DNA of 64,000 nucleotides, taken from the NCBI GenBank assembly GCA_051294905.1, contig CM119384.1:5394001-5458000 (forward strand). Direction: 5' to 3'. Positions 10,041-59,500 of the stretch are shown here, piece after piece. A program made the position numbers and the translations under genes. Source of the stretch: Botryllus schlosseri (lineage: Eukaryota). Every line of letters begins with the position of its first letter. Position 1 is the first letter of the stretch. The notes under the pieces are model-generated. The model was not told the origin of the DNA. It worked only from the letters and a program-made list of their open reading frames with translations, and made no database searches.

Positions 10041-19376
<9,336 letters not shown>

Positions 19377-21243: not shown

Positions 21244-25962
<4,719 letters not shown>

Positions 25963-26084: not shown

Positions 26085-26821
26085 TTGAAAAACCAATGAC
26101 CCTCAACGATAAATTATAATGTAAACTTGCATATCTAGGTATGAAATCAATAGAATTTCATTTAATTATTCGAATATTCATCGAATAATTAGGTTTTATC
26201 TCCATTTCAACAACTGAAATGTTGATGTAACTAGAAGTGAAAGTTTTTGATTTGTTCACTCAAACGTGATGAACGACCTCGATGATTCTAAATATTTTGG
26301 ACGACAAAACTTTTCAACGCTTGATCATATGAGTTTTGGGTGGTAATAGTATCATTGACAATTGACAGGTTGGCGTATGCCTATATATCGCTAAAAATGT
26401 TGACTAAGTTTCGTGATACTATCGAATAAAAACATTAAGTTCGATAATCGTGTTTATCTACTTCATATTTATGAGCGCATGCTTCTTAAAACATCTTTCC
26501 GGACATTTTTGGCTGGCCGATGAACGATAGTTATGGTTATAGCTGGAGTAGCCTTTGGTTAGTATTGAAGTTAGGGAGAAAAGCCGTAAAATCGAAGCTC
26601 ATTATTCAGCAAAACCCCAAACCTAAACCAGTCCAGAGCTACCCTGATCCTCCTGTATGGAATCTGTGTCCTGTGTTCACACAATCCTTTATTATTTTTA
26701 TTTTTTATTAAATTACTTTGGAGAATCATCGCTGATGATCAAATGATAATTTAGGCAAAATGTACCGAGATTTCAGTAGATGACCCAAGCTATAAATTCT
26801 ATAACCTTAACCATTATGAAT

Positions 26822-26908
26822 AGCTTCTTGGAGGTACAGAACTTCAATGTGCAATTGATTAGTATATTCATATTGAAATGAACCCGAAAATTTTCGGCTG
26901 GCACTCAT
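26822..26908 (-). mobile_element. 5'-truncated PLE tail remnant upstream of the ZDHHC ORF
   Basis: AGCTTCTTGGAGGTACAGAACTTCAAT...AACCCGAAAATTTTCGGCTGGCACTCAT matches the family; truncated within the hammerhead core. Confidence 0.75.
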
Positions 26909-38500: not shown

Positions 38501-41500
38501 CTACCAAAAATATTCTGGTTTATTTGAATATGAATATATTATTCAATTGTATGAGGAAGTTCTGTACCTTCAAGAGACTCTTCAAATACATCTACCAAGC
38601 CTGACTGCTTTAACTGCCTCCCGCAACAGGGTGCGATGTAATGGCTTGAAACTACGGCTCGCGTTAACTTTGCAGGGGAAAATGAAAGAAGCGTTCAAGT
38701 GTTACCAGGCGGCGATGAACATTGATAATGCGAGCGTTCCAGCTTTGACTGGCGCGATGCGTTGTCGGTTGCTGTCCGACGAACACACGGCGAAACACAT
38801 CGGGTATTCCTTGGAGGAGGTCGCCAACAGCCTGACGTTTCTGAACGAAGTGCAGCAGTCTGTTCAGCCTTCCTCTGTAAGTTTTGCCTTTTGGTCACGA
38901 TAGTTGAAGACGCAAGTCTGACCAGGTATAGAACCGAATGAACGTAAAGTTGACGATTAAATCAGGTTGTCATACATATCAAACTACTGATGCTTCGTCA
39001 ACGCTCTTTTATGGCGGTGAGGCAGCCTGTCCGAGAACGGCACATTGCAAAAGATTTGTTAGAATATGACAGGGTTGTAACCAAGTCACGAGGCTCCGAG
39101 TCACAAGTCAATCTCATTTTTATAGTTTGTACTCAAGTCAAGTCGAGTCATTTTTAATTCACCACCGAGTCAAGTCGAGTCCAAGTCAGCGATCGGAGGG
39201 TCGAGTCCGAGTCGTGGTATCAATGGTATCAAAAATCGCCTTGATTTACTTGCGCCACTGGAAGATAACATATTCCCACAAATAACAGCAAATCAAAACT
39301 TGCGAACGCTATCCATTAATGCTTAAGAATGCATAAACATGTATCCAACGTCCGTATACGACTGGTAATTACTGTGAATTTAGTAGTAGCCTACGATCAC
39401 ATGGTAATAATGTTCTGCGGCCCGCAGCACTTTTTGATGTTAAAATGCGACCCGTCGAATATGGGCAGTTGAGAACCCCTGCAATTTAGTCACACCAGAG
39501 TTTGCACCCTTAAATACTGTACTGCACTGGATAGGATGTAGTATATTTTTATTCTCGATGTTTACACCAACTCAAGATATATATATATACACACGGTCTG
39601 TGCATATGCACACAGCACACCAATAGTGCATGATGTGCATATGCCGCTGGACAAGGAAGGTGAAGATATAGCCTTGTAGAGCTTTCCGAATCTTGCACCA
39701 CCCCGGCGTGCTATCCCTGTAATGCTAAGCGCCAATCGGGGATATTATGGATACCAGTATTACCGTCATGGATATCGTGCGTTTCCCGAATCCCCATAGG
39801 CACATTTATCAAGCAAAGCTCCATGTTTGCATTACTGGTGCGAGTGCTATGCTGCACTGTGCTTTTGACGATTGATATGGCCCTAAAGTAATCATTGTTT
39901 GATTTGATTTTTTCAGGAACTTCTCTATCTGACTGCTGTGTATTCGCGGATCACTAATAAAAGCAGCGACGAGTGTTTGAAGTATTTATCGAAGGCGATT
40001 CGAACTCACTTTGAGAATATCAAGGTGAGTTTACGAACCTACCGTGCTGTGACGTCAGTGATTCGTGGTGTTCTGAAGTGAAATTCAGTCACCGTCGCTT
40101 GTATATTGTGATTTTACAAATTTTCAAGTAATTTTTTGGGGATTCAAAGAGAACTCTATTTTCTATTTTCAGTCCATACCGTTTGGTACAGAATACTTGA
40201 TAGCGTTGAATCCGGACTTTGTCTTGGAAATAGTGAAGGAATTGCTTAACATGGGGCCGTCTGAGGTGAGATTCTCCTTGACATATGCTTTTTGGTAATA
40301 TCAATAGTTATGTTACTGTTGATTGCCTTTAGCTGACTGAGATTCGCTCTCAAAATAACTGCGTAACAAAGGTGGATTCACCTGAAATTTGTTTAATTTG
40401 CACCAGCTCATCATTCCCGTGATTCTTTGGTGCACAACGGTCTTGTTCGACAGCATCCTATAGTGTAGTAGTTGAATAAAATTGAATAAAATTATTGCCA
40501 ATGTGTCTTTCAGTAACACGGTGTAGTGATGGTAATGTGTACAATGTACATAGTTGCACAACTAGAAAATTTTGTGCTTTTATAAATTAGATTAGCATTA
40601 GAATAATAGCTATACAATGTTTTAAAATTAGACTAGAATTAGAATTATAGCTACACAGTTCTTTTTCAAATTAGAATTAGAATTACTGAATTTGCGAAAA
40701 CTTGGAAATGGTACCAACCAAGTTAGTTCTTCATTTTCGTAAGCACGAGAATAGCTCCTGTAGCGTCTTCATGATAGCCTGAAACTTGATTTGAAATGAT
40801 GTTGCTGGAGTCTGGATGCGTAATATCTTTTTGTGTCGTCACAAGGCGATAACGCAAGGAGAGGCGATACCGGTTGTTCTGAGAGAGTGCGCCGGCGTCT
40901 TGAACGAAGTCTTGAAATCTTTGCCCGGAATGATGGACGCCCTCTACCTGTTTGCGAAAGTCAAGTTTTTGGCAGGTGAATATAATCTATCAGTTTGAGA
41001 TGTATCGAATACGTAACTGAATAGTCACGGCCTACTTAACTGTATGCCGTAACGAAATAGACTTGAAATGATTGAAATATTTGATACATACATTGTTTTT
41101 GATTGATTCCAAACCTTGACGCTATATAGCTGAACAGTGAACATAATGACTCGGACTCGGGTCAAAACACTATGTCTCGGACTCGACCCTCTACTAGCTG
41201 ACTTGGATTCGGAATTGACTCGGTGGTGAATTGAAAATGACTCGACTTGACTCGAGTCAAAACTATAAAAGTGAGAGTGACTTGTGACTTGGTTACAACC
41301 CTGCCTTCGGCTAGGTACCTCAAAGAATAATTCAGCGCCTCCGTGTCAAATGTGGAATTGCTGTTAAAACAGATTCACATCAATTACCAGATATGTTGTA
41401 AGTGGTCGACGTTGGTTCTCCAGTAGAAATAGTCACGTCATGACAAGTGCACAGTAGGGTTGTTCGAAAAAAACTTTTTTTTCCAAATCTCACTCGCCTA

Positions 41501-44500
41501 GTGACTAAATCGTCAGGTTGTCCAAGAAAACGATGCACACCAAATTTGACTCAATTCCAACCAGTAACGGCCGTGCAATCTTGAATTGAAATTTTTAAAT
41601 TATTATTAAAAATAAAAAAAAATAAAAATTCTCAAATTTTTCTGTCAACCCCGTGAAATTGTTGAGCTGTCTTCAAAGACGATGCAAAACAAATTTCAGT
41701 CAATTCCGACTAGTAGAAGCGGAACTATTTGAGTTTTTCGTTGATAATCCCCGGATCAAGGATAATCCGAGAATTATCAACGAAAAACTCGAATAACTCC
41801 GCTTCTACTGGTCGGAATTGACTCAAATTTGTTTTGCATCGTCTTTGAAGACAGCTCAACAATTTTATGGGGTTGACAGAAAAACTTGAGAATTTTTATT
41901 TTTTTATTTTTAATAATAATTTTAAAATTTCAATTCAAGATTGCACGGCCGTTACTGGTTGGAATTGAGTCAAATTTGGTGTGCATCGTTTTCTTGGACA
42001 ACCTGACGATTTAGTCATTAGGCGAGGGAGATTTGGAAAAAAAGTTTTTTTTGAACAACCCTAGTGCACAGTAGAAGTATTGTAGCGCTTCCCGAGTAAG
42101 GAAAAATGTAAGTATTCTAGGCATAGTTTGACCGAAAATCTGAAAGTTTTCAAGTAGCTGAAAGTAGTCATCGTAGTGTTCAAATTATATCCACTCAAGT
42201 AGTGCAAGTACGCAATACCTGAGTACTCCAAAAAAGTAAAAGTAGGCCTACTTGGTTACTGACCACCTCTGTTGATTACAATTGGGTTTTGTAATTGCGA
42301 TCTTCATTATTTCAATTAGTGTGTCAGCATCAGCATGCCACAATGTGCCACTAACAAACTAGGCCTGCGCTCAGTTAGACTTCAAAATCTGGGCCAGCTC
42401 TCTCATACGAGCCAGCATGTTGAATTATAATGTAGAAAAAGGTGATGTAGCAAATATCAAAGTTTTCATTGCCGGTGGGCCTTTTTTTCATGACGATGAG
42501 CCCTGGCCTCTGGTATGAGCATTTTTTGCAATACCTTGAATCTTTTTATGTTCTCCACAGTTATATTATGTGACATATTGTGTATCGCATTGTTTTCGAA
42601 CAGATTGAAATTTATTCCACAGGCGAATCCGATGCGGCCATGGCGACTCTGCAAAATTGTCTCGACCAAGACTCTTCGTACGGCGACGCTCATTTGTTGA
42701 TGGCGCGCATTTACCAGGAGCGCGGCAACAATGCGCTCGCAGCGCAATTTCTCGAGTCTGCTCTCAGTCACAACTTTGAGGTGAGATCGGGGTTTGCCGG
42801 TAAAGTGGGGTGGCATTGAATTTTATATCGGGCCATACTAATCGTCACATTTTGGTGGTAATCATCATGGATTAGTTCAAATCCCTGGGAAAAATTAATA
42901 ATATATACACGAGATGGCCCAAGGGAAATATGCATAGCCCGAAAATCGATATCACCGGGAAAGTTTTTGTGATATTAACCTCCCGGGATTTGTCTGTGTG
43001 ACCTTGTGTTTATTTTTACAAAAATATTCGAAACATATGAAAAATTATTTTTTTCGAGACTCCAACACCTTCGCGTCGTATTTTTACGGAGATGAAATCC
43101 CGGGCTCACCAAATATGTAATTAGATATTAGCTCTGTTTATGTATATCTAATCGAAATTTAGGCAAAATGTCAATTATTGCTTATTTCGTTTTGTCGAAT
43201 GTATAGTAGTTATTAGATGTACTTTTTGCCCCCAAACGTCCCTTGTCTATGAAAATGGCCCCCCAAGGGGTACGATCGCCCACTTTGAGAAACTATGTTC
43301 GAGATGTATCGAGTTTCATAGCGGAATGGATGAAGACATTCGCTCCCGAATAGCACTTTGATCTATTCCCCTATGGGACCTGATGCTAAGAACAAATACA
43401 AATCTAATCCCGGGCGTTGCACCGTACATCCGGCTTGGCTCGTGTTGGAGAATATCTCATTTCGTTTAATCTCGGTACATTCACACCACACTTGCTCTGC
43501 CTGCCTCATCTAATGGGTTATCGCTTCCGCTTGTATCTAAATCGTCTTCCCAGAAAAGTGTCTGTTATATTGGTGCCGTAACCTGGAACTCTCTACCAGT
43601 AGATTTCAGAAATTTACCTGACCATCTCTTTAGATAATAGACATTATCAGAAATATATCTCAAGATAAGTATTGATTAGATACCGATATTGCAGTTGCTG
43701 CCTTGTATTGTGAACTACCAATATGTATGTACTGCACGAGTGTACTCTATTGTAGTTTTATTCATTTCACTGGTGTGACAAATAAATGAATCTATCTATC
43801 TATCATTTCTCCGCAGATTCGTGACCACCCGGTTTACCATCTCATCAAAGCCAGAACGCTGATGACGGGCGGGCAGCTGGCGGACGCCGTGCAGACTTTG
43901 AAGTTGGCGCTGGCTCTGCCGGGCGTGAAAAAGCCTCTGTCGGCCGCTCAAAGACAAGGTGATTGTCGGCCGAATGTTTTTGTCTGCAGTTTGTTGTCTT
44001 TCATGCAATCTGTCACCGTCGTTTTTTTACATGACCACATATGTTTTTTGGCACCCGGAAACCCGACGTTTACAGCTTTGCCGAAAACTGCAGATTGCCA
44101 CCGACATCTTACTGAAGTAATTCCATGTTACAGGAGCTGCGTGTCACATTCAAAATAAAAAGGGTGACCCCTTATTCTGCAAACCTACAGCAATCTGAGC
44201 CTTCAGAGAACAATAGAGTGTAGACAGTTTTCTACTCTCCCGAATAGCATGTCATTTCCAATCATAATATTATTACATTCTGCATAGCTGATTTGCATTA
44301 GCTTTAATAGATATTGATGAAAAATTGCACTTATTAAATTGAAAATATAGTATCGTTGGAGGGAGAGCCAGAGAGTGTTGTGGTCTTGTTTGAGAAGGGT
44401 GATCAGCTGTAATATCCCGTTGTTGAAAATCTGCTTTTTCTGACATTAATCCTACTAGCTTCACATGTTTTTAATGACTAACTTTACCGTTTACTCTTCA

Positions 44501-47500
44501 GGTAAACGAAATGCCGTTGTTGCTACCGACAGGTTGGCTATCTTTTTGGAACTGGTACGGGCTCACCAGCTGAATAATGAACAGGTAAGCATTGTGTTGC
44601 TATACTGTGAGTTCAATCAATTGCGACAGGATGGAAATAATAACGTTTAGTTGATGCTTTGCTCATAGTTATTCAGATTTCTATGCCGAAATGAACTGCA
44701 ACAGTTTTCAGTGAATATCATCACGCTGTCATTCTTCCCTTTTACAGCACGAAGCTATAAAAGTAATGCAGGACGCGATAAATGCTTTTCAAGGAACTTC
44801 AGAAGAGGTGAGGTTACGTGGGGGACACGACTGAACAAATCGATTTCTTATGTCACATCCAATACGCAGCGTGACCCATATACAGACATGTATGCCGTGT
44901 TTGAATTGCATTAGTCTGGGCGTCTCCCTGCTAAATTATTGAAATCAAATGCGTAATCTGGGGAATTGAGAGCTTTTTCACGAAGTCATGTTCTGAAATT
45001 GCCTTGGACTTGGTAGTAGCTGTTTTTATGTTTGGTATGCCATCGTAAAGATTTAACAAATCTTAAAGTTTACCATAACACAAGTTTTAAATATATACTC
45101 TATTCTCTGTGCTAATAATTGTTTCAAGAACTTCCCAATGGTGGCTTGAAAATATCCAGTGAGTGTTAATAATACCTTGTTCTTATCAGATTCGTGTTAG
45201 CATCGCCAATGCGGACTTGTCTCTGCAACGCGGAGAAGTCGAACAAGCGTTGAGCATGCTGAGAGATATCAAGCCCGAGCAATCGTACTACGTGCAAGCG
45301 AAAGAAAAAATGGCAAACATCTTCCTACATCACAGGAGGGACAAAAGCCTCTACATCGGCTGTTACAGGTCAGGGTTCTAATGACTCGAGTCGCGATTTT
45401 TCGGTGACTCGACTTGATTCGAGTCATTTTTTTCGAGTGCGTAAAATGACTCGACTTGACCGTGCATGACTCGAAGTCGTATGACTCGAGACTAGGACGC
45501 CCAAGACGTACATTTCATTGTGACTTTGAAGAATAGTAAAGTTCCACATTATCGGTATTTCGTCCACCAGTCCCGATACTTGGAAAATAGGGTCAGAAAC
45601 TGTTAAAACTGCGGAAAATTACCATATTATGACTGCGAGCCATTCTATATCACCGGAGCAGAGTTAAAAAAGTGGAGTGGATTGAACTGAAAACTGAACA
45701 GTGAACATAATATAATGACTTGGACTAGGACTTGAGTCATAACATGAGTCAGACTCGACCCTCTACTAGCTGACTTGGACTCGGACTTAACTCAGTGATG
45801 AATTGAAAATGACTTGACTTAACTTGAGTCATAACTATAATAATGAGATTGACTTGTGACTCGTAACCTTGTGACTTGGCTGCAACCCAGTTACAGGTAT
45901 TCGATTTTGACTGTTAATCGCAGCAGTAGGTCAAATGCTGAAGCTGCCGGTTTCAACGGTGTGTGTGTGTGTGTGTGTGTGTGTGGGAAACTAAGAATCG
46001 TACATCTTGTCGCCAGATTGGTTTACACAAAAAGGCCCATGTTTGGTTTCGCAACGACCATGCAACTGAGACCTGGTCTTTTTTCGAAACTTTTATATGA
46101 AATAGGATGTCCTTATATAGTGAAGTGTCTCCTTGCAAATTCTTTCAAATCATAATCATATTCTATAATATTCATCCACGCAGGCATACAACATACAGTG
46201 CGATACCTGAGACGCATTGGGATGTTATGAACAGATAGCAGAATGTCAAAACGACTGAGCACGGTCCATCAATGTAGCATCCATCTCCGGCTATTGGTAT
46301 TGCTAGAGATTTAATTCACAACGTTCTCCATTTTTGTGTTGTCTTTTTGTGAACAGGGGATCATTCGAGTGTAAGAGCATAGTGTCCTATATGGTGTCGA
46401 CACAGGCAAATCTCACGCCTCAGTGAAATTGTATCACGTCACAATTTCCATTTGGCTACAGGCAATTTGACGGTCATTTTTGACCGGCTTGCCGAGCATT
46501 AAATTTGGTAAAACGGGTATCAATTGAAAGCTGACTCTCCACTGATTACAAAAATATAAATTTTATTCCGCTCGTGGCCCTGGAACTCCCCCAATCAGCC
46601 TCGAATTTTTCATTGTTATGGAGATTGGCATTGGGACGCAACAATGCTGTCTGGCGAAACGAGAGAGTAGCTCAGGACGTAACAATGCTGTCTGGCGAAA
46701 CGAGAGAGTAGCTAAAGAGAAAAATAGCCAGACATCATTGTTGCGTCCCAATGCCAATCTCCATAACAATGATAAATTCGAGGCTGATTGTGGGAGTTTC
46801 AGGGACATGAGCGGAATAAAATTTATATTTTCGTAATCAGTGCAGAGTCAGCTTTCGATTGATACCTGTTTTACCAAATTTAATGCTCGGCAACCGGTCA
46901 AAAATGATCGTCAAATTGCCTGTAGCCAAATGGAAATTGTGACGTGATACAATTTCACCGAGGCGTGAGATTTGCCTGTGTCGACACCATATAGGACACT
47001 ATGGTAAGAGTCCAGATAAACCTCGGACACTTTGAAACACCCTTACATTCCGAACTTGAACGGCAATCTTTAGTATTGCTAATAGCGTATAAACCAACCC
47101 CCAAATCTCTGGCAGATTAATATATGCCCGTTTTACACATTTAAATATCCCTGGAAGTGGGATGTATCTGACCGCATCTGTAATCTTGCATGCTTGCATG
47201 CGATGCTGCACCGGTTCGAGACCGTTACCACGGTCTGCATTTTTTATTTAGGGAGCTGGCTGTGAAGCAGCCGTCCGCACACACAAAGCTATTGCTCGGC
47301 GACGCCTACTTGAGTATACAGGAGGTAGGTGTAAGTTACAACGTTCGTCTGCGGTGAATTTTCAAGATCTTTTCCTCTCAGCCCGACAAGGCGATCGACA
47401 TTTACGAAAAAGTCATGTCAGAAAGTCAAGACGACGGAACGTTGGCCAGCAAGATCGGACAAGCGCTCGTGAAGACGCACGACTACAGACGGGTATGTGA

Positions 47501-50500
47501 TTGTGTCTTTTTCGCAGATGGGGGGGGGGGTCACTTATGTGGTTCCTACACTTTTTCGGAGTAATCAAACGTCAGTCGCTTACTCCCACTACTTATTTAA
47601 GGTTCACGACTACTTCCAATTCCAAGTTCAGTGAGTAGAGGGTCGAGTCCGAGTCCAAGTCATTATGTGCATTGTTCAGTTTTCAGTTCATTCCTGTTCA
47701 AACCCCCTTTTTTAACTGCACATTAGAATAGAATGGCTCACATTCATAATATCGTAATTTTTCTCAGTCTTAACAGTTTCTTACCCTATTTTCCAAGCAA
47801 ATTACCAATAATGTGACAACTTCACTATTCTTTGAAGTTAACAAGGAAATGTCTGTCTTGGCCGTCCTAGTCTCGAGTCATATGACTCGGTTTGAGTCAT
47901 GCTCCTGCTCAATGACTCGAGTTGAAGTTGAGTCAATACACAAATTGACTCGAGTCGAATCGAGTCATTTTACGTATTTGAAAAAAATGACTCGACTCGA
48001 GTCAAGTCGAGTCACCAAAAAATCGTCACGTCGTCGTCACTTTTGGGAGGGAAGTGCTATAATAACCCATGTCGCCGGATATGTTTTCGAAAATTGAGCC
48101 TGTTTGTAGTGTTACCCTCCACAATGCGTTGGTCACGATTCTTCTGCTATATCTCAATTCAAAAGACGCCGCATGCAATTAGCTACTAATATTTTGCGAT
48201 GCTGTGACCAAACCTACTCTCTGAAACTACTTGCTCGAGTATTTGTGTACGCAACGCATGTCTTGGAAATCGGTAATTGTGCTTTATAATTTAGTCTAAA
48301 TTGTCACCCCATTTTACATGGCACACTAAACTGAACTTTGTCGTTACTGCTGCCTTTGCCGGGGATGAAAGCAGAGAATGTACCTTCAACACTCAGTTTT
48401 GAATGTTACAGAGTTGTGAACGTATCTATGTTTGTTTCAGAGTCCTCATTGTGGATTTTTGTGCACTGATTAAACCGGGGGTGGGCAAACTTTTGAGCTC
48501 GCGGGCCGCATTCAACATCTGAATCCATTCGCGGGCCGCACTATATAAAATTGGGATTATAAACTAAAACGCAATATTGATATTTGATGATATATATGCC
48601 ATATTTGATTATATATATGCCATATTTGATTATATATATCATGTTAGCTTCAAACACGCTTCTACTATGTGTAGATAAAATATAAATATCCCAATTCTAA
48701 GCATACAGACAACGAATCTACCTAAGACACGCCCAAATCGTTTTTTATAAGCACATCAGCTTCTTTGAGGTACAGAACTTCAATATACAATTGAATAGTA
48801 TATTCATATTGAAATGAACCCAAATATTTTCGGCTGACACTCGTCAGGGGCAATGGTCAGCAACTAGTAGAGAATTCGCAAGAACAGCGTATATCATCAA
48901 TCGTAACACAAAATATGACGTCACCAGCACGAATACGAGAGCGTTCAATGTACTATTTTTAGATGATACACGAACTCTTTTTGTTGACACAGCCTTGGCT
49001 GGTGTATTTTGATAAAAGTCGACTCCAAGGCACACAAATGAAAGTGTGAGCGACCCTTTCCGAGTATGCCAAATCTGTCGTCTCGATAATTTTTCGCACA
49101 AGCGGGATTATCCAACAAGTGTTGGCCAATTGCAGAATTTATGGCCTTTGATTGTTCCGCATCAATCTTGAGCGGGTGAGTTAAGGGTGAGCTTTTCACC
49201 GAGCGTGTTCTAATGAATCTAGGGACATGCTGATTTATGCGTTCCTGCAAGCGCTATGACGTTCTTCCCACATAGCCACAATCACAGTGACACTTAAATT
49301 CGTAAACTACATTGCTTTGCTGAAGTGCGGGTAGCACGTCTTCACGTGTTGCAGGGAGCAGTTGCGTTGTTGTGAAAATCACGTTGGTCTTCACTGTGTC
49401 ATAACACTTATTGACCGCTGAAATCAATTGCTTTTCAAAGCGGGTGGAAATAGGCCCTATCCAAGGTAGATGCATGTAAACATCTTTGGTTGTTCGTTCG
49501 GTAGGCTCTGTTGACTTTTCTGCATTGAAATGCGGCATAGAGAGGAAAGTAACGCATTTCAATGCAGAAAAGTCAACAGAGCCTACCGAACGAACAACCA
49601 AAGATGTTTACATCCATCTACCTTGGATAGGGCCTATTTCCACCCGCTTTGAAAAGCAATTGATTTCAGCGGTCAATAAGTGTTACGACACAGTGAAGAC
49701 CAACGGGATTTTCACGACAACGCAACTGCTCCCTGCAACACGTAAAGACGTGCTACCCGCACTTCAGCAAAGCAATCTAGTTTACAAGCTGGCTGATCAC
49801 GAGTATGACAGGAATAAGGAAAAGATCAAGCTATCAAATTTTTTTTTATTCGAGCTCAACTTCGCGCCCCCTTCAGATGCTTTCACGCCCCCGAAGGGAG
49901 CGCGCCAATCAGTTTGAAAACCACTGTCTTAGAATTATGATGTTGAAATATACTAAGAAAAAGTTATTCAAGTCTCTGCATTTATCCGATTTATAGTACT
50001 CATTTTATCACTATTTTTAAAAAGTTTCTTTGGACTCTCGCGGGCCGCACAGAACGGTGTTGCGGGCCGCATGTGGCCCGAGGGCCGTAGTTTGCCCACC
50101 CCTGGATTAAACCATCACTTTATCCTTCGATATAGCGCTTGATTTACCATGTTTGAGAGTTGATTAATGGATAATTCCAAACGAGAAGATCAATTGTTAT
50201 TAGTCCACGACGTACGTGATGACAATCAGCTTGAAACTCGTGTAATTTTTGTTGTTGTTATTTAAACCACTTCCAGGTATTTACATGTTTTGAGATTTAA
50301 TTTGTATAAATAATCCCGTCGTTGCGGCCATCACTCTCGGCGCAGTGACTTGTAAAGAAATCTTGCACTAGATCATGTAATTTGGTGCTTACTGTAACAT
50401 CAGCGATGTCCGAACCCTTATCCAAATTTTGTGTGATTTATTTTGCATCGAAATGTCTCTTATCAAGAAGGGCTTCTGTGTATGTCGCAGGCGATCTCGT

Positions 50501-53500
50501 ACTACGAAACCGCGTTGAACAACGGAGGCCGGCATCATTTGAGGTTTGAATTGGCGGAGTTGCTGCTCAAGCTGAAGATGTACGGCAAGGTGGAGAAGAT
50601 TTTGACAGAGGTTAGCCGCTTTGACAGTTGGGCGACTATACAGAGACACCTAAAATATGCGGTAATATATGTGAAAACGGGATTTCGACGGAATTGAAGG
50701 AAAATTAGCAGCATGAAATTCACACAGGAAATACTCAATGCCGGAAGGTTGACTAAAAACGTGGGAGCGGGTCTCAATGGAGTCCAGTCGGAAAAATCAT
50801 TATATTTGTATATATTGCAAGATATCTACTTTGTCCCACCTCATAGCTACCTAACTAAAAGATCTATTGACTACTCAGGGCCTATTATTTGGAACGCATT
50901 ACCACAAAATATCCGTGAATTGCCAGACTTTGCTTCTGTCATTTGTTACCATAGTTTAATGAAAATGAGAGTCTCTCTCTCTCCCTCACACACACGCTCT
51001 TACGTTACCGATTTTAGATTCCAGACGACGACCGCTCGAAAGGAGAGACCGAACTCGAGAGAGCGATGTTCGACACCAAGAGGCTGCTCCTTCTCTCCTC
51101 CTTTTACGCGGAAAGGGGCGACCACGAGATGGTAGCGCAATCTCTCACGCGGGCCAGAGATAAACAGGTGGGCGTGGCGGAGGCCGCAGTGTTTTGTTAT
51201 GATTGCGCGGATGCCGGAGCATGGATGTTTTTGAGTGCTTTTTGCTTCTGAATCCCTTCTGCGGCGCCCGTCCAATTTTCAGGGTTACAGAAGCTGAAGG
51301 CGCGCCGTAATCTCTTTAGGATTTGTACCGAGCTTTGTACTCAAATATTCACTTGATGGAAATCCACGGTCACGCTGTATAAATAAACAATGGTTTTCTC
51401 TTGCTGTATCTGTCAGTCATGATTAGGTCGGTTTGTCAAGCTGTGCCGGTGACTCAGTTGTTTTGTGGGCGCTGATCTGTTGATGTTTGTATGGATACTT
51501 TCGGTGTGCGTTGTAAGTTTGGCAAGGTAATGAACGAATGACTTGTATTCGAGCATCCCTATCATCGCCGTGGTCTCTGTTCTTGCTGGCCAAATAGACA
51601 AGCTGCCGTATGCAATGAGAATGAAAACGAGTTTGAGTTTCTGAGCTTCAAACTTTTTTGCCCAGTATCAACCAGAAGAGGGTCTCATAGATACAGAACA
51701 ATATATAATTGACTAATATATTCACTCCTCCAACTGCATGAGCTATTTCAATAAGAATGTATTGTTCAATTGTATATTGAAGTTCTGTACCTCCATTTCT
51801 TCAAGTTTTCAGATCCATTTTTCAAACTGATTGAAAATCAAGTTTTTGTAAAGTTTCGTCATTTTTTAGCCATATCTTGGCTGTTTTTATGGGTGTAACA
51901 TTGTTTATAAGTTCACCATGGCCTAGATGTGTCCGAAATAGAATGTGAACTTGGCGTTAAGTTAATTTTCTTGAAATGTGTAACATGGACATGAGCTACT
52001 GTGATTCCGTCGCGACGATATAATATTCAATGGCTGGTGTATTGAAGTTTTTTACCTCCAAGAGTAATACTGTGAAAACAATTCTATTCAATATTCATAT
52101 TGAAATAGCTGTTCGGGGTATGAATATATTCAATTGTATCACGCGATACACTCACAATCGCAAATTCAATCTAACGGCTAATGGTTTTGAAAAATGCTGC
52201 GTTGTTTAAATTATTTGAATATTTTAAGTAACTTTCAGCAGCTGTGCTGCACAAGCTATTTAAGACCTAGCACTCAATGCCCAGTGTGGTCAACTGTGTC
52301 AACTATAGGTGCTTTCACACAACCTTGCCTGTTTTTGGTATAGCCGTAATGTGTGTGGTTAACGAGGCGTGGCAGCCGGCGACTTGTAACTTTACCCACG
52401 CGAGGTTCAGGTGTCGCGAGTACTGCACAAATATTGACTTTTGTCTGTCTGAGTCATAATTTTGGTGTCAGGTCTGAGGTATCCGTTACAAAAATATCTC
52501 GGGGGTTTGATTACTTTGGGATCAGTCTTTTGTTATTTTGACTCGTACAACGACCGCAACTGTCCGGTTATGTTGACTGTTCCTTGAATAACCGCTTTTA
52601 AGTCATCCGAGGAATTGTATTCAACGTACATTGAGTGTGACTTTGTGTGGATAGGATGGCCCTCTGTGTAAATCGCTGTTGATCAGTTTGACGTGGATTG
52701 GTTCAAATCTGCCGCACGTTGTATGGAAGGCAGATGTGTTCAACAACAGAGTACTTCTACCGTTTCGAAGTACTCAAGTAGGTTTTGTTTCCCTGTACTA
52801 CTCAAGTAATTACGGCTTTATGCAACACTACTTGATTTTTATGAAATAGAGTAGAAAGTTGTTTAAAATTACATCTTGCAATTGCCAAACCTGCAGCTTC
52901 CGATTATATGATGAAAGATTGCAGCCCCTCAACTCAAGGTTGTAATGACTCGAGTCTCGATTTTTTTATGACTCGACCTGACTCGGGTCATTTTTTCAAA
53001 TGCGTAAAATGACTCGACTCGAGTCGATTTTTGTATTGACTCGACTTATACTCGAGTCAATGTGCATGGCTCGAACCAAGTCATATGACTCAAGACTAGA
53101 ACGGCCAAGACGGTCTTTTCATTGTAAGATCGAGGAATAGTAAAGTTACCACGTTATTGTTATCTTGTCTATCAGTCCTGATAGTTGGAAAATAGGACCA
53201 GTAACTGTTAAAACTGAGGAAAATTACGATATTATGAATGCGAGTAATTCTATATCACTCGAGCAGAGTTGAAAAAAGTGGGTTTGACCAGACTAAGCTG
53301 AAAACTGAACAGTGAACACAATGACTTGTACTCGGACTCGGTGGTGAATTGAAAACGACTCGACTTGACTCGAGTCAAAACTGTAAAACTGTGATTGACT
53401 TGTGACTCGGAACCTTGGGACTTGGTTACAACCCTGCGTGAAATATAGTTTTTGAAATTTCCACTGTAATAGTAGGCGTCTCTTTATCAACGCCATTCTT

Positions 53501-56500
53501 GTGAATTGAATGCCTACCCTTAACCTCAAAGACACACGTTGATTTCGCTCGCAGAACTGGTTGTATCTGTAAAATGCGGAATGAGCAATTTCATTATGCC
53601 AATCCTCAAATGTGTGACCAATGTTAAAATAATTTCATTTAATCTTTGTGTAACGTATATTGACACGTGCACAACTGCACATACACACGACTGACACGAG
53701 AACCTGATGTTGGGTATGTAGGCTACCGATTTCGGCCACTTATGGTGCAAGAATTTAACTATCTAGTCGAGTGCGAAGATTGCCTATGCTGGAAATTGGC
53801 TGGCCTATTGACTTCAAAACTAGGTCAACTACCGGATTTCAGTGGAAATAAACATACAAAGTGCTCGCAAGCTCGTAACAAACGCAATTGCTTATATGAC
53901 TTTAGTGGAAGACTTTCATTAACTGCTCTTCTCGCTACTGTCAAGGTTATTAATTGCCAAATGCCATTTATTGATGTGCTGTGACTCAGATAGATGTTGT
54001 ACGCATATGCCCGGTGCCCACTGTGTTTGTATTGATATACTAACATCCATGGACCTTTTCTCTTTTTAATTGGCTCGTATATTGCCTGTATGAAATGGGA
54101 TTTATCGGGGACGAATGAGCAATTGACCATATAATACGGTCACTTGGTGGGCATTTATATGAATAGTCGATGAGAAGGAAAATGTAATGTGCGGAAAAGA
54201 CAAAAGACTTACACACAACCTAGGAACCTTTGCAAATCTGTAATTGATGAATCTGGCACACAAGTGACCAGAATATTCTAACATCGACTTGAGTTCCTTG
54301 GCCCTGATTCAAGATTATCAAATTCAAATTGAACGAAATAAATCATGGCCACGTAATAAACACTCGAGATTGGAGCAGACTAGCATTGAACAAACCGCTG
54401 ACGGCACTTCAAAGTCGGCAAGTGATCGTGCATCAAGTCTCTTGTCATTTCAATATACTGTTTTACCCGGTGTGTATATCGCTGATGGCTATTTCTCATC
54501 TAATTGACATCAATAATCGACATAGCTAATACGTTTGACGGATTACAACCGGCTAATGATAGCACGTCGATACGTATTTTCTGCCTAGTACCACCTCTCG
54601 GCAACCGGATGAGTACTTCGAATATGGTTTTGATGAGCGGTTGTTCATTTAACGTCCCGCCAAGCAGGGATTATGACCTCGGTGAAGTATCTGTAACACC
54701 GGGACCGGGCACGTTCTGTTGCGTTGAGATAATGAAGATTAATCATGTGGATTTTATGTCATATTGAAGCCATGGCGACTGTTGGTGTTGATCTTCGCAA
54801 CTGGCCGAGCCTGAGTGTTAATTGCTTAGTATATTGACATTGTCTTTGTTGTAACGTATTATCAGTATTGTTTAAAAGATTAATACGATGTCCCTTTTTG
54901 AGGGATAAGTATGCTTGCGAATCAGCTGAGTGTAACAAGCTGTACTCTTTTGATAGTTGTTTCAAATTTGTCACTGCAGGTCTAATGTCTATCTCTAGTT
55001 AATTAACAAACTCCTTCGCAGTGTGCTTTTACACCTTGCTCAGTAAACAATTAGGGAAAAAACGCTTACCTTGACTTCAACTAAGTGTGTCATGATTAAT
55101 TAGTGTGTGTAAGCCTACTGACTTGTCTCGATCTTGCATCATAACAGATTGAGGTCTTGAAGTAGCTCTGATCCCGATTTCTTGAAGCAAGGCCTGTTAT
55201 TTTGAGTGAATTCTGATTCCTGCTGAAATTAACGATGTTAGGAATGCGAAACGTTTCTTTATATATGTTGTTACATAATGTACATGGAGCAAAGTAATGG
55301 ATGGCCTCAGGTGTTGGTGTTTTTATGGATTAACGTACTGCTCAATGCAACTGATCCTTTGATTTATGCACAAGTCATTACTGTATAATGTATATAGCTA
55401 TTTGTAAATAACTCCGTATGATTCCAGGCCCGAGTTTTGAAGCGAGTGCAATTGGAGCAGCCCGAGTCTGTGTCGGCTCAGAAAGAGCTTGCTGCCAACA
55501 TTTGCTGCAAGCTGGCTGATCACGAGTATGACAGGAATAAGGACAAAGATCAAGCTATCAAGTTTTATAAGGAAGCTCTGATTTACTGTGATAACGATGT
55601 TCAGGTGAGTGAATTTGGCGTAAAATGAAATTCACTTGCGTATGGGCCATTCACAACTAATTAAAACTCTTTAATCTGGATCATATTGTGTACAATCGGG
55701 GCCCGTGTGTGTAATTGGTCTTTGTAATGTTTTTAATGTTTGCTTACTGAAAAAAGCGCCATTACCCATATTGTTTTACCTGCCATAGCACCATCTCAGT
55801 GGTGTTAGGCTATGGTAACTTACTTGAGTTTACATAAGGAAATCCACCTATTTGCATCAGGAATAACATATCTGTAACATAACTTGCTTAGAAATATCTA
55901 AAATGTTGCCGAATAGACAAAAAGAGTTTATTTCCACAAAATAAGTGAAAATGTGTCATCAAGCTGGTCACATATACAGTCGTATAAAGGTCTTTGAAAT
56001 ATTATTAAAACTATAAATATATGTTGTAAAAAAGTATAATTCAATGACATCTATAGCAGTGTATGTGAATATAATATACACTTCGCTTGTAATAACTTTT
56101 CTACTCAAGGCAACGAAAATAGCATTCTTTGACCTCTGTTTCAATCGATATGTTGGTTTGTTTTCAGGCTCTGCTCCAAATAGCAAAGCTTTTTCTGCAG
56201 AGTGGCGATCTGGACATGTGCCAACAGTACTGCATGCAGATCCTAAAGCAAGTCGAAACGACGGGACATAGCGAAGCCAGTATGGTCAGTAAATGTGGAT
56301 TTCGATCAAAATGTCCCATCTTGTCGCCTAAACACCGTGTTCCAGAGAGATGTAGCAATGGCTTTCTTTTCTACGGCAGATGATGGCTGACATTATGTTC
56401 CGTAAAAACTCCTACGACGAAGCGATATATCATTATCAAAAGCTGTTGGAGGCCAAGCCGGACTATTACGAAGCCCTGGCGAGGCTTATCGGCCTGCTGC

Positions 56501-59500
56501 GGAGGTCCGGCAGGCTCGAGGACGCTCCCGGGTACTTGGGCATTACCGAAAAATCCGATGACGAGAAAGTAACCGGCGATGACATGTTCAATTCTAAATC
56601 TGGGACTTCCAATGATCCCGGGTATCATTTCTGTAGAGGATTGTACGAATGGTTAGTATGTTTGCTTTGAAGCCACTATATCTGCTCTCTGACCATCAAG
56701 ACCCAGTGAATACTACGGTATTATTACCCAACTGAGTTTAGGCTGCTAATGCAGATTTACCCTCGCACAAGGGTGAGTTGCGACAAGCTTAATTGACCAT
56801 TAAGTTTAAATTTACTGTCGATACTAGGACCCCAAAACTTTGACGTTGAAAATAACAATTCAAATCCAGAGGGGGTCAGTAACGAAGCACGGCTGTTTTT
56901 TTGGAGTGCTCAAATCGTTACGTATTTAGGCTACTTCCCTCCTACCTACCTTCGATTAACTGGGAAAAGTATGTTAACAATTGACCAAAACTACTCTTTG
57001 AAAGTGCTTAGAGTAATTTTAGCATGCCTTGGCAATCGATGCTGTTACTTGTAATTAAGTAGATTTACGACCTTGCTTGTGCATCTACTTAGCACCAACG
57101 CGGACTATTTTGACCAACTCGTCTCAAATACCACCGAAACGTATATTGACGGTGTGGTTCAGGGGTCTCAAACACACGTAATGTGCGGCCGACTACAGAT
57201 GCAAGTGCAGAAACTATATTTGAAAATGTAGAAGGCGTGAATCGCTTCCCAGTAAATCATATTTTCACGGCGGGTGTGGAATATCATTCCGCAAGGTCCT
57301 GTCAAAGAATGCCTACTTAGAAATACATTGAATATCCCTATTATTGATGCTGCAGCGCTTAGCGTCAGCAAAACCTAGGAAATTGGCCCGTGAGCAAATT
57401 TGAGTGTGAGACCTCTGGTGTAATTGATGATACGCGGTCAGAAACCAGAATCGATAAAGAATCTGGATGTTTTTGTTCGCAGTGATGAGAAATATCTCAA
57501 AGTGTTGACTTTGATCACGTTGATATTTGCCACAGGTACAGCGGTAGAGCGAAGGAAGCGTTGCAGTCGTTCAACATCGCACGTCGAGATGCCGACTGGG
57601 GGGAGAGGGCCGTCGAAAACATGATTAAAATTTGCCTGAACCCAGATCAAGACACTGTCGGTGGAGAGGTGTTGGAAAATGTCGACAACGGGTGAGTGCA
57701 TGCAGACCAAGTTTTACGAGCACAAAGGCAAATCTGGCCTCTGTCATTTAGGGCTATCGTACGGACTTATTCGCGGATTGAGACACCGTCTCATTGGTTT
57801 TTTCTTGTCCATATTGGAATATACCGGATTGTTTTCGGCTGACTCTTGTCAGGGGTAATCGTCAGCAACTGGTAGAGAATTCAAAAGAACTTTGACGTTG
57901 ATATTATGATTGCCCCTGATGAGTGTCAGCCAAAAATATTCGTTTTTTTAAAAATATGAATATGTTATACCGTTGTATCCAGAATTTCTGTACCTCCAAA
58001 GAGTCTTCAAACACTTTACATTCTACGTGCAGTCTTTTACATCGACCCCTACCACGGCGTTGTGTCTGAATATTCAGGAACAACGAAAAACTGTCTGCCG
58101 CAGAAGCCGGTGTGGCCACCGCGGAAAGACTGATGAAAGAACTCATGAAGACCCCGCCTTGTTCTCCCGCGGTCAAGTTGAGGAGGGAGATTCTCTCGAA
58201 ATACATCCAGCTCAGCAAGAGAAGGAGACCAGAGGTGGAAAGCGCGGTGACGGCTTTAGTTGATATTCTCAAAGACGAGGTGAGATTTGGAATTACATTG
58301 TAATTTGCTTTGAGACGGCGCTTGTGTGTGCTGTATTTCTATTGTTGGGTTTTCCTCAGCGGGTTCGATTCCATAAACCACCGTTCTTCACCTCACCCGG
58401 TATCTGCATGCTAATAGTAACTAACGCATTGATCAAGGATGGGCAATTATTTTCCTCCGTGGGCCAAATCAGAAGTAGAAAATACGTTGGCGGGCCGAGT
58501 GAAAATTTTTAGCTATATTCTGCAGCTTATTTTAATCTTCTTATTAAATTACACCGTGAATAAATGCTGCTCAGTGAATGTGTTGATGTTAGGTGATGAG
58601 AAAGTGACGGTTAATTTAAAAAAAATATCTATTTGCCATCATGATTCGAAACAATTTAAACAATATACATTTTAACGCTTTAAACCCCTATTCACGTTCT
58701 TCTATTAAGACTCGAAAACAGTGGTTCTCAAACTTTTTAGGCTCGCCTTCCTTTGTGATAGTGAAAAATTTCTCGCCCCCTTATCATGATATCACAAAAT
58801 ATTAAAACTGCAACCACAATGCTAGCAATCCCAGCGAAAAGTTTGTGGCATGGACGGCTATGGCTGTTGATGAGAGAATTCTCAAGTATGAAAGTAGGAG
58901 AATACACGGTTCTATATATCCCTGATTGACTTGTTTTACTAATTTGGGATTTGGAAACGCATCACACAACAATTTGAAATACATGCCGTATAATTTTTAA
59001 CGTGACAATGGCAACAAAGAAGGTTTGAACTAAACTGTATGGAAAGAGTGATTTCTTGTGAATTTAATTGCTACTCATACTTTGCCGCATTGCCCTTATT
59101 TTGAATCTGGATTATGCAGGGGCCGGTGTAATCGTGCCATATTAATGAACAGGCTTCAAAGTAAATGAATTTCCTGTTGAGTTGATACAGCCTATGGCGT
59201 TAGTCATTCAAAATATGATGTTAGGCCTTTCGCGGGCCGCACAGAATAGCTTCGCGGGCCGCACTTTGCCCAGGGTGGCATTGATGGTTTAACAATAATT
59301 TCAGCAAAGAATCTTCTAGGTACGGTACTTCAGTATCAGTATACAACTGAATAGTATATTCATATTGAAATAGACCCAAATATTTTTGGCCAACTCTTGT
59401 AAGGGGTAATCGTCAGCAACTAGTGGAGAATGGAAGAGAACATTGTATGTGATAGTTGATATATAATGTTCTCCCTGATCAGTGTCAGCTGAAAATATTC

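What the first reader, a model, noticed from the sequence alone, without database searches (positions are those of the whole stretch)
48758..49837. PLE insertion with a 233-bp foldback fused in frame to a captured copy of a downstream TTC21B exon
Seen: the minus-strand PLE (48758-49534) is followed by an 18-nt spacer and a plus-strand duplicate of its own 5' part (49553-49785, mirroring 49302-49534, about 6 substitutions). This runs straight into CAAGCTGGCTGATCACGAGTATGACAGGAATAAGGA-AAAGATCAAGCTATCAA (49785-49837), identical except for one deleted base to TTC21B exon 23 at 55508-55561, 5.7 kb downstream in the same gene. The junction is in frame (QSNLVY|[11 protein letters not shown]). Inference: two-ended, twin-priming-like PLE integration in which one cDNA began on the host gene's own nascent RNA and then template-switched to PLE RNA, or a locally templated repair patch. 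This would be a rare snapshot of cis host-exon capture by a PLE.
Basis: partly seen in the sequence, partly recalled or inferred. Interest (0 to 1): 0.8.

Follow-up and report, generated by a model that had tools for sequence, protein, structure and literature searches.

The report
Retrotransposon insertion carrying a nearby exon piece
A broken Penelope-like retrotransposon in an intron of the cilia gene TTC21B/IFT139 was inserted as two copies facing each other, and a 58-base copy of an exon lying 5.7 kb downstream in the same gene was sealed into one end; the two-copy layout is ordinary for these elements, but picking up a piece of the invaded gene itself is an unusual single case.

Summary
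(1) The 18-nt "spacer" is not a loop. It is Penelope-like element (PLE) sequence continuous with the plus arm. The insert is therefore a minus copy (48758-49534) and a plus copy (49532-49785) that overlap by 3 nt (GCG). (2) The exon copy runs 49785-49842 (58/59 matches to 55508-55566). (3) The insert is bounded by a probable 8-bp target-site duplication, TTTTTTAT (chance 0.3%), and lies inside a hAT-type MITE that has its own perfect 8-bp duplication.

Head-to-head pairs are the norm for this PLE family: 6 of 8 inserts in the window have them. This matches published biochemistry showing that a PLE protein nicks and extends both DNA strands. This locus is unusual only because its plus arm stops 530 nt short of the PLE 3' region, and an exon-23 piece from the same gene bridges it to the target.

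A simple snap-back hairpin is excluded. A single two-ended integration is well supported. Whether the exon piece was copied from TTC21B RNA (favoured, about 0.5) or from local DNA during repair (about 0.3) cannot be settled from one locus. The in-frame junction means nothing: it is a 1-in-3 chance, and a frameshift follows. I rate this a new variant of a known kind, of moderate interest.

The parts
48468..48475 (.). Left copy of the 8-bp target-site duplication GATTAAAC of the host hAT-type MITE
   Evidence: Identical 8-mer at 50105-50112, with TA at positions 4-5 (nnnTAnnn)
48476..50104 (.). Non-autonomous hAT (Buster-like) transposon (MITE) in a TTC21B intron that hosts the PLE insert. Terminal inverted repeats are CGGGGGTGGGCAAACT / CAGGGGTGGGCAAACT, with subterminal GCGGGCCGC repeats. 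About 528 bp without the insert.
   Evidence: 22-nt inverted repeat. The same terminal sequence occurs in more than 120 metagenome contigs, with conserved CA at -2/-1 and TA at -7/-6. Only about 70 terminal nt are shared.
48741..48748 (.). Left copy of the probable PLE target-site duplication TTTTTTAT
   Evidence: An 8-mer shared by the 20-nt flanks; 0.3% of random position pairs in this window do as well
48749..48757 (.). 9-nt filler AAGCACATC between the TSD and the PLE 3' tail; origin unknown
   Evidence: Not part of the PLE tail consensus; unique in the window
48758..48790 (-). PLE 3' 'tail' extension of the minus copy, about 10 nt short of the family consensus end
   Evidence: Alignment of tails of window copies and L122; the tail concept is from PMC8557442 and PMC11167929
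48791..49534 (-). 5'-truncated PLE copy (linker + GIY-YIG endonuclease region + 3' UTR), equal to L001 positions 1075-315. It has one in-frame TAG at 49251-49253.
   Evidence: 84% nt identity to the independent copy L001 and 96% to L123; ORF pieces; BLASTP to the C-terminus of the RT-EN protein P0109, 7e-18
49532..49534 (.). 3-nt overlap (GCG) where the two PLE copies meet head to head
   Evidence: Both alignments to L001 include these bases
49532..49785 (+). Inverted second PLE copy, equal to L001 positions 294-547.
   Evidence: translation [13 protein letters not shown] versus P0001 GMERKLTQFNAEK
49785..49842 (+). Sense copy of an internal 58-59 nt of the TTC21B exon at 55508-55566. It shares 1 nt (C) with the PLE arm and 1 nt (T) with the TSD.
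49842..49849 (.). Right copy of the probable PLE target-site duplication TTTTTTAT, followed by T (ATT motif)
   Evidence: ATT/AT-rich cleavage preference is reported in PMC11167929
50105..50112 (.). Right copy of the hAT MITE target-site duplication GATTAAAC
55428..55605 (+). Source exon of TTC21B/IFT139 (178 nt). The copied part is 55508-55566, internal to the exon, 80 nt from its 5' end and 39 nt from its 3' end.

Best explanation
This is one old integration event of a Penelope-like retrotransposon into an AT-rich site (TTTTTT/ATT) of a hAT MITE in a TTC21B intron. Both nicked target strands were used as primers, as is usual for this family. The top-strand end was extended on PLE RNA from the 3' tail to element position 315, giving the minus copy. 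The opposite (reciprocal) end did not start at the normal PLE start site. It first copied 58 nt of a TTC21B transcript, beginning at the U-run of exon 23, and then jumped (1-nt overlap) to PLE RNA at position 547 and copied it to position 294, giving the plus copy. The two cDNA 3' ends paired through GCG/CGC, and each was completed on the other. All parts then decayed neutrally (about 1.3% per arm). Shown: the anatomy, the strand orientations, the overlaps, the TSD and the cis origin. Inferred: the order of steps, and that the exon template was (co-transcriptionally spliced, locally tethered) RNA rather than DNA.
For: Two separate copies rather than a hairpin: the plus copy starts 21 nt further 5' (L001 294) than the minus copy (L001 315), and the 'spacer' is PLE sense sequence. 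Family habit: 6 of 8 PLE inserts in the window are (-)(+) head-to-head pairs. In the other five, the plus arm's outer end lies in the PLE 3' region, at L001 1057-1076 in the BLAST alignment or extended into the 3' tail. TSDs of 12 and 10 bp flank two of them. One event: the 8-bp repeat TTTTTTAT encloses both arms and the exon piece (chance 0.003). With L001 as outgroup, each arm carries 3 derived changes. The exon copy carries 1 substitution and 1 deletion in 59, which fits the same age. Biochemistry: a purified PLE protein cleaves and extends both strands at AT-rich/ATT sites without needing homology (PMC11167929). Cis origin: the source exon is 5.7 kb away in the same gene and is the only such patch in 64 kb. 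RNA favoured: the piece is sense on the strand expected for a cDNA primed from the right flank. It is also wholly exonic, although only 9.5% of the local 18 kb is exon: a random 58-mer is wholly exonic with p=0.05, and only 7 of 238 TTTT sites are exonic. Its orientation is antisense to the main copy, as in L1 twin-priming chimeras with cellular RNAs (PMC13174262).
Against: The piece crosses no splice junction, so an RNA template is not demonstrated. The exon-enrichment argument rests on one case that was flagged partly because it is exonic. No empty site or second assembly of the locus could be found, so the TSD, though unlikely by chance, is a low-complexity T-run. A 9-nt filler of unknown origin sits at the other junction. 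The near-coincidence of the two arms' 5' ends (294 vs 315) is not explained by independent priming, unless both templates shared a 5' end or a strong stop.
Confidence: 0.5

Rival explanations
1. Same two-ended integration, but the exon piece is a DNA-templated patch. While the intermediate was being sealed, a free 3' end invaded nearby duplex DNA at exon 23, copied 58 nt, and rejoined the target at the T-run (microhomology-mediated template switching / polymerase-theta-type end joining).
For: Junction overlaps are minimal (1 nt C at 49785; T at 49842 within a T-run), as in end-joining with templated inserts. The template is close in cis (5.7 kb). There is another short filler at the left junction and a 21-nt stuttered filler at the plus-arm end of the pair at 12319-12339. 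Diverse templated insertions at L1 insertion sites are reported (PMC11702581).
Against: A random local DNA template would be wholly exonic only about 5% of the time, and in this orientation only half of the time. The 3' end in question sits in an RT complex known to extend both strands on RNA.
Confidence: 0.3
2. Two events: an ordinary head-to-head pair with a full plus arm (a roughly 760-bp near-palindrome) was inserted first. The unstable palindrome was later broken, the outer 530 nt of the plus arm were lost, and the break was repaired with a patch copied from exon 23.
For: In the other five pairs, the plus arm's outer end lies in the PLE 3' region. Long palindromes are known to be unstable (general knowledge). 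The present 233-bp repeat is predicted to fold at -433 kcal/mol as RNA.
Against: The right breakpoint would have to fall exactly at the insert/TSD boundary, leaving the 8-bp duplication intact. The divergence of the exon copy is no lower than that of the arms.
Confidence: 0.1
3. Self-primed snap-back: a single cDNA folded back on itself with an 18-nt loop and copied itself. This is the classical foldback reading of the inverted repeat.
For: Near-perfect 233-nt arms. Self-priming has been proposed for PLEs (PMC3846280).
Against: The 18 nt are PLE sense sequence attached to the shorter arm. A copy made from the longer (tail-bearing) cDNA could not contain positions 294-314, and a copy made from the shorter arm could not extend 530 nt beyond it. 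Three of the six pairs in the window show the same 'wrong' polarity.
Confidence: 0.05
4. Assembly or library artefact (chimeric foldback read).
For: Inverted PLE structures are known to trouble assemblies (PMC8557442). No second assembly of the junction was found.
Against: The arms differ at 6 sites, 3 derived in each. The exon copy carries its own deletion and substitution. The insert has a TSD. The geometry matches five other inserts in the window.
Confidence: 0.03

Closest known systems
Canonical head-to-head (inverted 5'-truncated) insertions of endonuclease-positive Penelope-like elements, with 'tail' and variable TSD (Arkhipova 2006; PMC8557442; PMC3846280; PMC11167929)
   Same: A 5'-truncated copy with an adjacent inverted copy, 5' ends facing. 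The tail is at one outer end only. The target is AT-rich. The TSD is 8-12 bp. The junction overlap is short. Both strands are extended by the element's protein in vitro.
   Different: Here the second arm does not end in the PLE 3' region. It stops at an internal position (L001 547) and is bridged to the target by 58 nt of a host exon.
LINE-1 twin priming and twin-priming chimeras with cellular RNAs (Ostertag and Kazazian model; PMC13174262; PMC11702581)
   Same: A second reverse transcription starts from the reciprocal end of the break. The foreign RNA-derived piece is antisense to the main element. The TSD is preserved. There is microhomology at the internal junction.
   Different: The element class and endonuclease differ. 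In classical L1 inversions the two segments do not overlap, whereas here 251 nt are present in both arms. L1 chimeras use abundant RNAs in trans, whereas here the source is the invaded gene itself, 5.7 kb away.
Host DNA capture by Penelope elements in Adineta vaga (PMC3846280)
   Same: Non-element host sequence is enclosed within a PLE insertion unit bounded by TSDs. Template jumps are invoked.
   Different: Those captures are long spacers or whole intron-containing genes between pLTRs, moved in trans. Here a 58-nt internal exon fragment from the same locus sits at the reciprocal-end junction.
Templated insertions at double-strand-break repair junctions (polymerase theta end joining, MMBIR/FoSTeS; general knowledge)
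   Same: A short patch copied from a nearby sequence in cis, with 1-4 nt junction overlaps.
   Different: Such patches show no expected preference for exons or for the sense strand, and they are not tied to a reverse-transcription intermediate.

Membership tests
Penelope-like element, endonuclease-positive, C-terminal GIY-YIG type | PLE-type reverse transcriptase upstream of the endonuclease | tested here: met
   Absent from this 5'-truncated copy. It is present in the family: P0151 (same 90% cluster as P0001, which is 89% identical to the window piece) aligns 48% over 374 aa with residues 475-832 of the 836-aa P0109, including YVDD. P0109, P0121, P0130 and P0080 hit Pfam RVT_1.
Penelope-like element, endonuclease-positive, C-terminal GIY-YIG type | C-terminal GIY-YIG endonuclease domain | tested here: inconclusive
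   The motif [18 protein letters not shown] is visible in the minus-strand ORF, and the C-terminal piece matches the end of P0109 at 7e-18. However, Pfam GIY-YIG gave no hit on the window pieces and only a sub-threshold hit on P0109 (18.2 bits against a cutoff of 22.6).
Penelope-like element, endonuclease-positive, C-terminal GIY-YIG type | 5' truncation, adjacent inverted copy, and a 30-40 bp tail at one end | tested here: met
   6 of 8 inserts are head-to-head pairs, and a tail of about 45 nt beyond L001 position 1075 is present on one arm.
Penelope-like element, endonuclease-positive, C-terminal GIY-YIG type | Variable-length TSD at AT-rich targets | tested here: met
   8 bp TTTTTTAT here (p=0.003), and 12 bp and 10 bp at two other pairs. 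No empty site was available.
Penelope-like element, endonuclease-positive, C-terminal GIY-YIG type | Hammerhead ribozyme motif in the terminal repeat | tested here: inconclusive
   The boxes CUGAYGAG ... CGAAA-AUAU-UC-GGG are conserved in all copies. No Rfam hammerhead model matched at gathering score or at E<=10, and the minimum-energy fold is not a three-way junction.
Classical LINE-1-type twin priming | Two oppositely oriented cDNAs inside one TSD, joined by microhomology | tested here: met
   3-nt GCG overlap at 49532-49534; the TSD encloses both.
Classical LINE-1-type twin priming | The two segments are adjacent, non-overlapping parts of one RNA | tested here: not met
   L001 positions 315-547 occur in both arms, so two templates, or a region copied twice, are required.
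Self-primed snap-back (hairpin) cDNA | The loop lies in the orientation of the templating arm, and the copied arm is not longer than its template | tested here: not met
   (see the rival explanation).
RNA-templated host capture (retro-chimera) | The captured piece shows RNA marks: exon-exon junction, poly(A), or sense-only and exon-only bias across cases | not testable with these tools
   The piece is internal to one exon. There is only one case in 64 kb, and no genome-wide data were accessible.
hAT superfamily (Buster-like) non-autonomous element, for the host MITE | Terminal inverted repeats starting CA(G)GGG, and an 8-bp TSD with central TA | tested here: met
   TIRs at 48476 and 50104, and a perfect TSD GATTAAAC. 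Consensus over 148 ends: CA at -2/-1 and TA at -7/-6. The nnnTAnnn rule for Buster-type hAT is from my own knowledge of the literature. No transposase was examined.

The most novel reading that the evidence does not exclude
The reciprocal-end reverse transcription of a Penelope-like element was primed on co-transcriptionally spliced RNA of the very gene being invaded. This would show that PLE integration can occur in an actively transcribed gene in the germ line and can stitch a piece of that gene's exon into its own intron. It would be a cis route to exon-fragment duplication, distinct from the trans capture of abundant RNAs by LINE-1.
Probability: 0.45. Interest if true: 0.65.

Novelty: new variant of a known kind. 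Interest (0 to 1): 0.45.

Why it matters
The way PLEs integrate is still poorly understood. In vitro work shows that both target strands are extended, but natural products that record what the second end can copy are rare. This locus preserves such a product, with a defined target duplication, two cDNA arms and a foreign 58-nt piece whose source is known to the base. If the piece is RNA-derived, it shows that the second PLE reverse transcription can start on a non-element RNA with almost no homology and then jump to element RNA, and that local nascent transcripts are available at the integration site. That would point to a mechanism for exon-fragment duplication within genes. If the piece is DNA-derived, the locus is an example of templated repair during retrotransposition. 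Either way it is a single anecdote until a genome-wide survey is done. A side effect is that the insert places a 233-bp near-perfect hairpin, matching the PLE endonuclease region, inside the TTC21B pre-mRNA.

Tried and rejected
- Rfam at gathering score on the whole window, and at E<=10 on 48700-49000: no hammerhead. There was only a sub-threshold mir-7360 match in the PLE tail, taken as chance.
- Exact look-up of the three ORFs around the junction in the 15-billion-protein collection: absent.
- Homology search with the junction-specific C-terminal 56 residues of the 143-aa ORF: nothing. So there is no independent assembly of the junction.
- Scan of metagenome contigs with the MITE terminal repeat, to find an empty site: more than 120 contigs carry the same termini, but they share only about 70 terminal nt. 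No empty site was found, and none is from this genome.
- Search of all fetched loci for the exon copy, the exon, or the MITE interior: no hits.
- Snap-back hairpin model: rejected on the polarity of the 18 nt and on arm lengths.
- 'In-frame fusion' as a meaningful feature: rejected. It is a 1-in-3 chance, a frameshift follows 36 nt later, there is no start or splice context, and the longer minus copy carries an in-frame stop (the short plus arm itself has no stop).
- Origin of the 9-nt left filler: unique in the window and not PLE.
- Pfam on the window's PLE pieces: no family. Identity was established through relatives instead.
- Species identity was not pursued.
Full report
**1. What is in the sequence**

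The inverted repeat is exactly as described. The arms are 49302-49534 and 49553-49785, 233 nt each, with 6 substitutions and 18 nt between them. Directly after the plus arm, 49785-49842 matches 55508-55566 at 58 of 59 aligned positions, with one deleted base and one G>A mismatch at 49838.

A self-BLAST of the whole window shows this is the only strictly two-copy short patch, apart from two transposon-related pairs. The window contains no N.

The source lies in a 178-nt coding exon (55428-55605, + strand) of the TTC21B/IFT139 orthologue. Pfam ARM_TT21_4th scores 7e-15, and human TTC21B residues 862-917 in PDB 8fgw_D score 5e-16. I did not verify the exon number.

**2. The element is a Penelope-like element (PLE)**

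The minus strand of 48758-49534 encodes the linker and endonuclease region. The motif [18 protein letters not shown] is followed by an in-frame TAG and a further 101 codons. Pfam does not recognise these short pieces.

Homology to relatives establishes the identity:
- The 94-aa piece has 951 relatives among 1.84 billion representatives, the best (P0001) at 89% identity.
- A member of P0001's cluster (P0151) aligns 48% over its whole 374 aa with residues 475-832 of an 836-aa protein, including the RT motif YVDD and the C-terminal endonuclease.
- Four long relatives hit Pfam RVT_1.
- The window's C-terminal piece matches the end of that protein at 7e-18.

All copies carry conserved CUGAYGAG...CGAAA boxes in the 3' region. 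No Rfam hammerhead model matched, and I could not draw a canonical fold. That defining feature therefore stays inconclusive.

**3. The '18-nt spacer' is not a spacer**

P0001 is encoded on a 1213-bp ENA contig (L001). This is an independent copy of the same family, about 85% identical at the DNA level.

Aligned to L001, the minus copy covers L001 positions 315-1075 (window 49534-48791, plus a tail to 48758). The plus copy covers L001 294-547 (window 49532-49785).

The 18 nt therefore belong to the plus copy. They read [13 protein letters not shown] in the plus frame, against GMERKLTQFNAEK in P0001. The two copies meet with a 3-nt overlap, GCG, at 49532-49534.

This matters for the mechanism:
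- A cDNA that folds back and copies itself leaves the loop in the orientation of the templating arm.
- It also cannot make an arm longer than its template.
- Here the shorter arm reaches 21 nt further 5', and the longer arm extends 530 nt further 3'. A simple snap-back is excluded.

With L001 as outgroup, three of the six differences are derived in each arm. Both arms have therefore decayed equally, by about 1.3% each. The exon copy's one substitution and one deletion in 59 nt fit the same age.

**4. Boundaries and context**

The 20-nt flanks share the 8-mer TTTTTTAT (48741-48748 and 49842-49849). Only 0.3% of random position pairs in this window share an 8-mer. Two other PLE pairs in the window have 12-bp and 10-bp duplications.

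This probable target-site duplication encloses the following, in order:
- a 9-nt filler of unknown origin (48749-48757);
- the minus copy;
- the plus copy;
- the exon piece.

That argues for one integration event.

The whole insert lies in a non-autonomous hAT-type element (48476-50104). Its terminal repeats end in GGGGTGGGCAAACT, and it has a perfect 8-bp duplication, GATTAAAC, of the nnnTAnnn kind. More than 120 metagenome contigs carry the same termini but unrelated interiors, so no empty site could be recovered.

By eye, TTC21B exons lie on the + strand on both sides of the insert. The insert is in the intron between the exons at about 47382-47492 and 50491-50610. Two further exons lie between it and the source exon.

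**5. How unusual is the layout?**

Mapping L001 onto the window gives eight PLE inserts. Six of them are (-)(+) head-to-head pairs: 11939-12318, 35082-35222, 38431-38546, 48791-49785, 57810-57963 and 59348-59513. L001 itself begins with an inverted PLE piece.

In the five other pairs, the plus arm's outer end lies in the PLE 3' region, either at L001 1057-1076 in the BLAST alignment or extended into the 3' tail. One arm of each pair carries the roughly 45-nt tail.

This is the published PLE anatomy (PMC8557442 and PMC3846280). It also fits the finding that a purified PLE protein cleaves and extends both target strands, at AT-rich/ATT sites, from two internal start sites whose interval is the tail (PMC11167929).

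The foldback as such is therefore ordinary. What is special is that this plus arm stops at L001 547 and is joined to the target by host exon sequence.

**6. Mechanism**

The simplest reading uses only sense RNAs as templates:
- The top-strand 3' end (...TTTTTTAT) was extended on PLE RNA to position 315.
- The bottom-strand 3' end (...ATAAAAAA) was extended on a TTC21B transcript, starting at the GUUUUAU of exon 23, for 58 nt.
- It then switched, with a 1-nt overlap, to PLE RNA at 547 and ran to 294.
- The two cDNA ends paired by GCG/CGC.

The orientation fits this. The exon piece is sense on the + strand, as expected for a cDNA primed from the right flank. It is antisense to the main copy, like the twin-priming chimeras of LINE-1 with cellular RNAs (PMC13174262).

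The cis origin is hard to explain by a randomly packaged mRNA. It points to RNA tethered at the locus, or to local DNA.

The exonic origin gives modest support to spliced RNA:
- Only 9.5% of the local 18 kb is exon.
- A random 58-mer is wholly exonic with p=0.05.
- Only 7 of 238 TTTT sites are exonic.

This is one case, and it was noticed partly because it is exonic. The fragment crosses no splice junction. I therefore give about 0.5 to the RNA version and 0.3 to a DNA-templated patch made while the intermediate was sealed. I give 0.1 to a later palindrome-triggered deletion repaired with a patch; this is disfavoured because the right breakpoint would have to coincide with the TSD boundary. 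I give 0.05 to a rescued snap-back and 0.03 to an artefact.

One feature is not explained by independent priming. The two arms end within 21 nt of each other in the element, which suggests a shared template 5' end or a strong stop.

**7. Claims that do not hold**

The in-frame junction (QSNLVY|[11 protein letters not shown]) is real, but it has a one-in-three prior. The frame is lost at the 1-nt deletion 36 nt later, and there is no start or splice context. I attach no meaning to it.

**8. Consequence worth noting**

Transcribed as part of the TTC21B intron, 49295-49795 is predicted to form a 233-bp hairpin of -433 kcal/mol. This is a possible source of double-stranded RNA matching the PLE endonuclease region. 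I did not test it.

**9. Novelty**

The following are all known:
- head-to-head PLE inserts;
- host DNA enclosed in PLE units (PMC3846280);
- twin-priming chimeras (LINE-1);
- templated repair patches.

In the papers I searched, I found no description of a PLE insert whose reciprocal end carries a fragment of the invaded gene's own downstream exon. That search is not exhaustive. I rate the finding a new variant of a known kind, of moderate interest, pending a genome-wide survey.

Noticed in passing
window 48468-50112: The PLE insert is nested in a roughly 528-bp hAT (Buster-like) MITE with a perfect 8-bp TSD GATTAAAC, subterminal GCGGGCCGC repeats, and a 21-nt tandem repeat (48580-48642). The same terminal sequence occurs in more than 120 JGI metagenome contigs from other organisms, with conserved CA and a central-TA target.
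   Followed up: partly
window 11939-12318, 35082-35222, 38431-38546, 57810-57963, 59348-59513: Five further head-to-head PLE pairs, most only 100-200 nt long. Their TSDs include ACTATGATTATT (11889/12340) and TTCAGCAAAG (59300/59533). The pair at 11939 has a 21-nt stuttered AT-rich filler (12319-12339) between the plus arm and the TSD. Solo copies lie at 14816-14994 and 26812-26906. Tail-only fragments lie at 15251-15313, 51745-51795 and 52018-52063.
   Followed up: partly
window 59221-59290: The end of a second, related hAT-type MITE (GCGGGCCGC repeats, terminal TTTGCCCAGGGTGG) lies about 20 nt from another PLE pair. Two of the eight PLE inserts are thus in or next to this MITE family. This is possibly just a shared AT-rich target preference.
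   Followed up: no
window 36766-37361 and 46378-47005: Two copies of a palindromic repeat (arms about 270 nt, 95-96% complementary, 56-71 nt apart), 9.6 kb apart. One is upstream of the exons at 47.2-47.5 kb. This is an unclassified foldback-type element.
   Followed up: no
window 41467-42052: Nested inverted repeats (160-nt arms at 96% and 147-nt arms at 92%, the latter 8 nt apart). This is another foldback-like structure of unknown family.
   Followed up: no
window 48791-48880 (minus strand) and all PLE 3' regions: The boxes CUGAYGAG-UGUCAGCC-GAAA-AUAU-UC-GGG are conserved, and an upstream GCUGAC is complementary to GUCAGC. This is hammerhead-like, but no Rfam model recognised it. The minimum-energy fold pairs GCUGAC with GUCAGC and buries the CUGAYGAG box.
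   Followed up: partly
L001:1-43, L122, L123: L001 (ENA ERZ23491602) begins with an inverted PLE fragment, so it is a head-to-head pair in another assembly. L123 (ENA ERZ650156) holds a solo copy 96% identical to the window's copy, which suggests that sample contains the same or a very close species. L122 is 99% identical to L001 and carries a full tail.
   Followed up: partly
window 48761-48815: A sub-threshold Rfam match to mir-7360 (23.4 bits against a gathering score of 47, E=0.032) falls in the AT-rich PLE tail. It is probably a chance hairpin.
   Followed up: no
window 2369-2784, 12681-12819, 22956-23218, 31479-31937, 52730-52786: Many copies of another MITE-like family, with ends CCAGAGGTGGTCA... 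/ ...TGACCACCTCT and internal GTACTCAAGTAG motifs, are scattered through the TTC21B introns.
   Followed up: no
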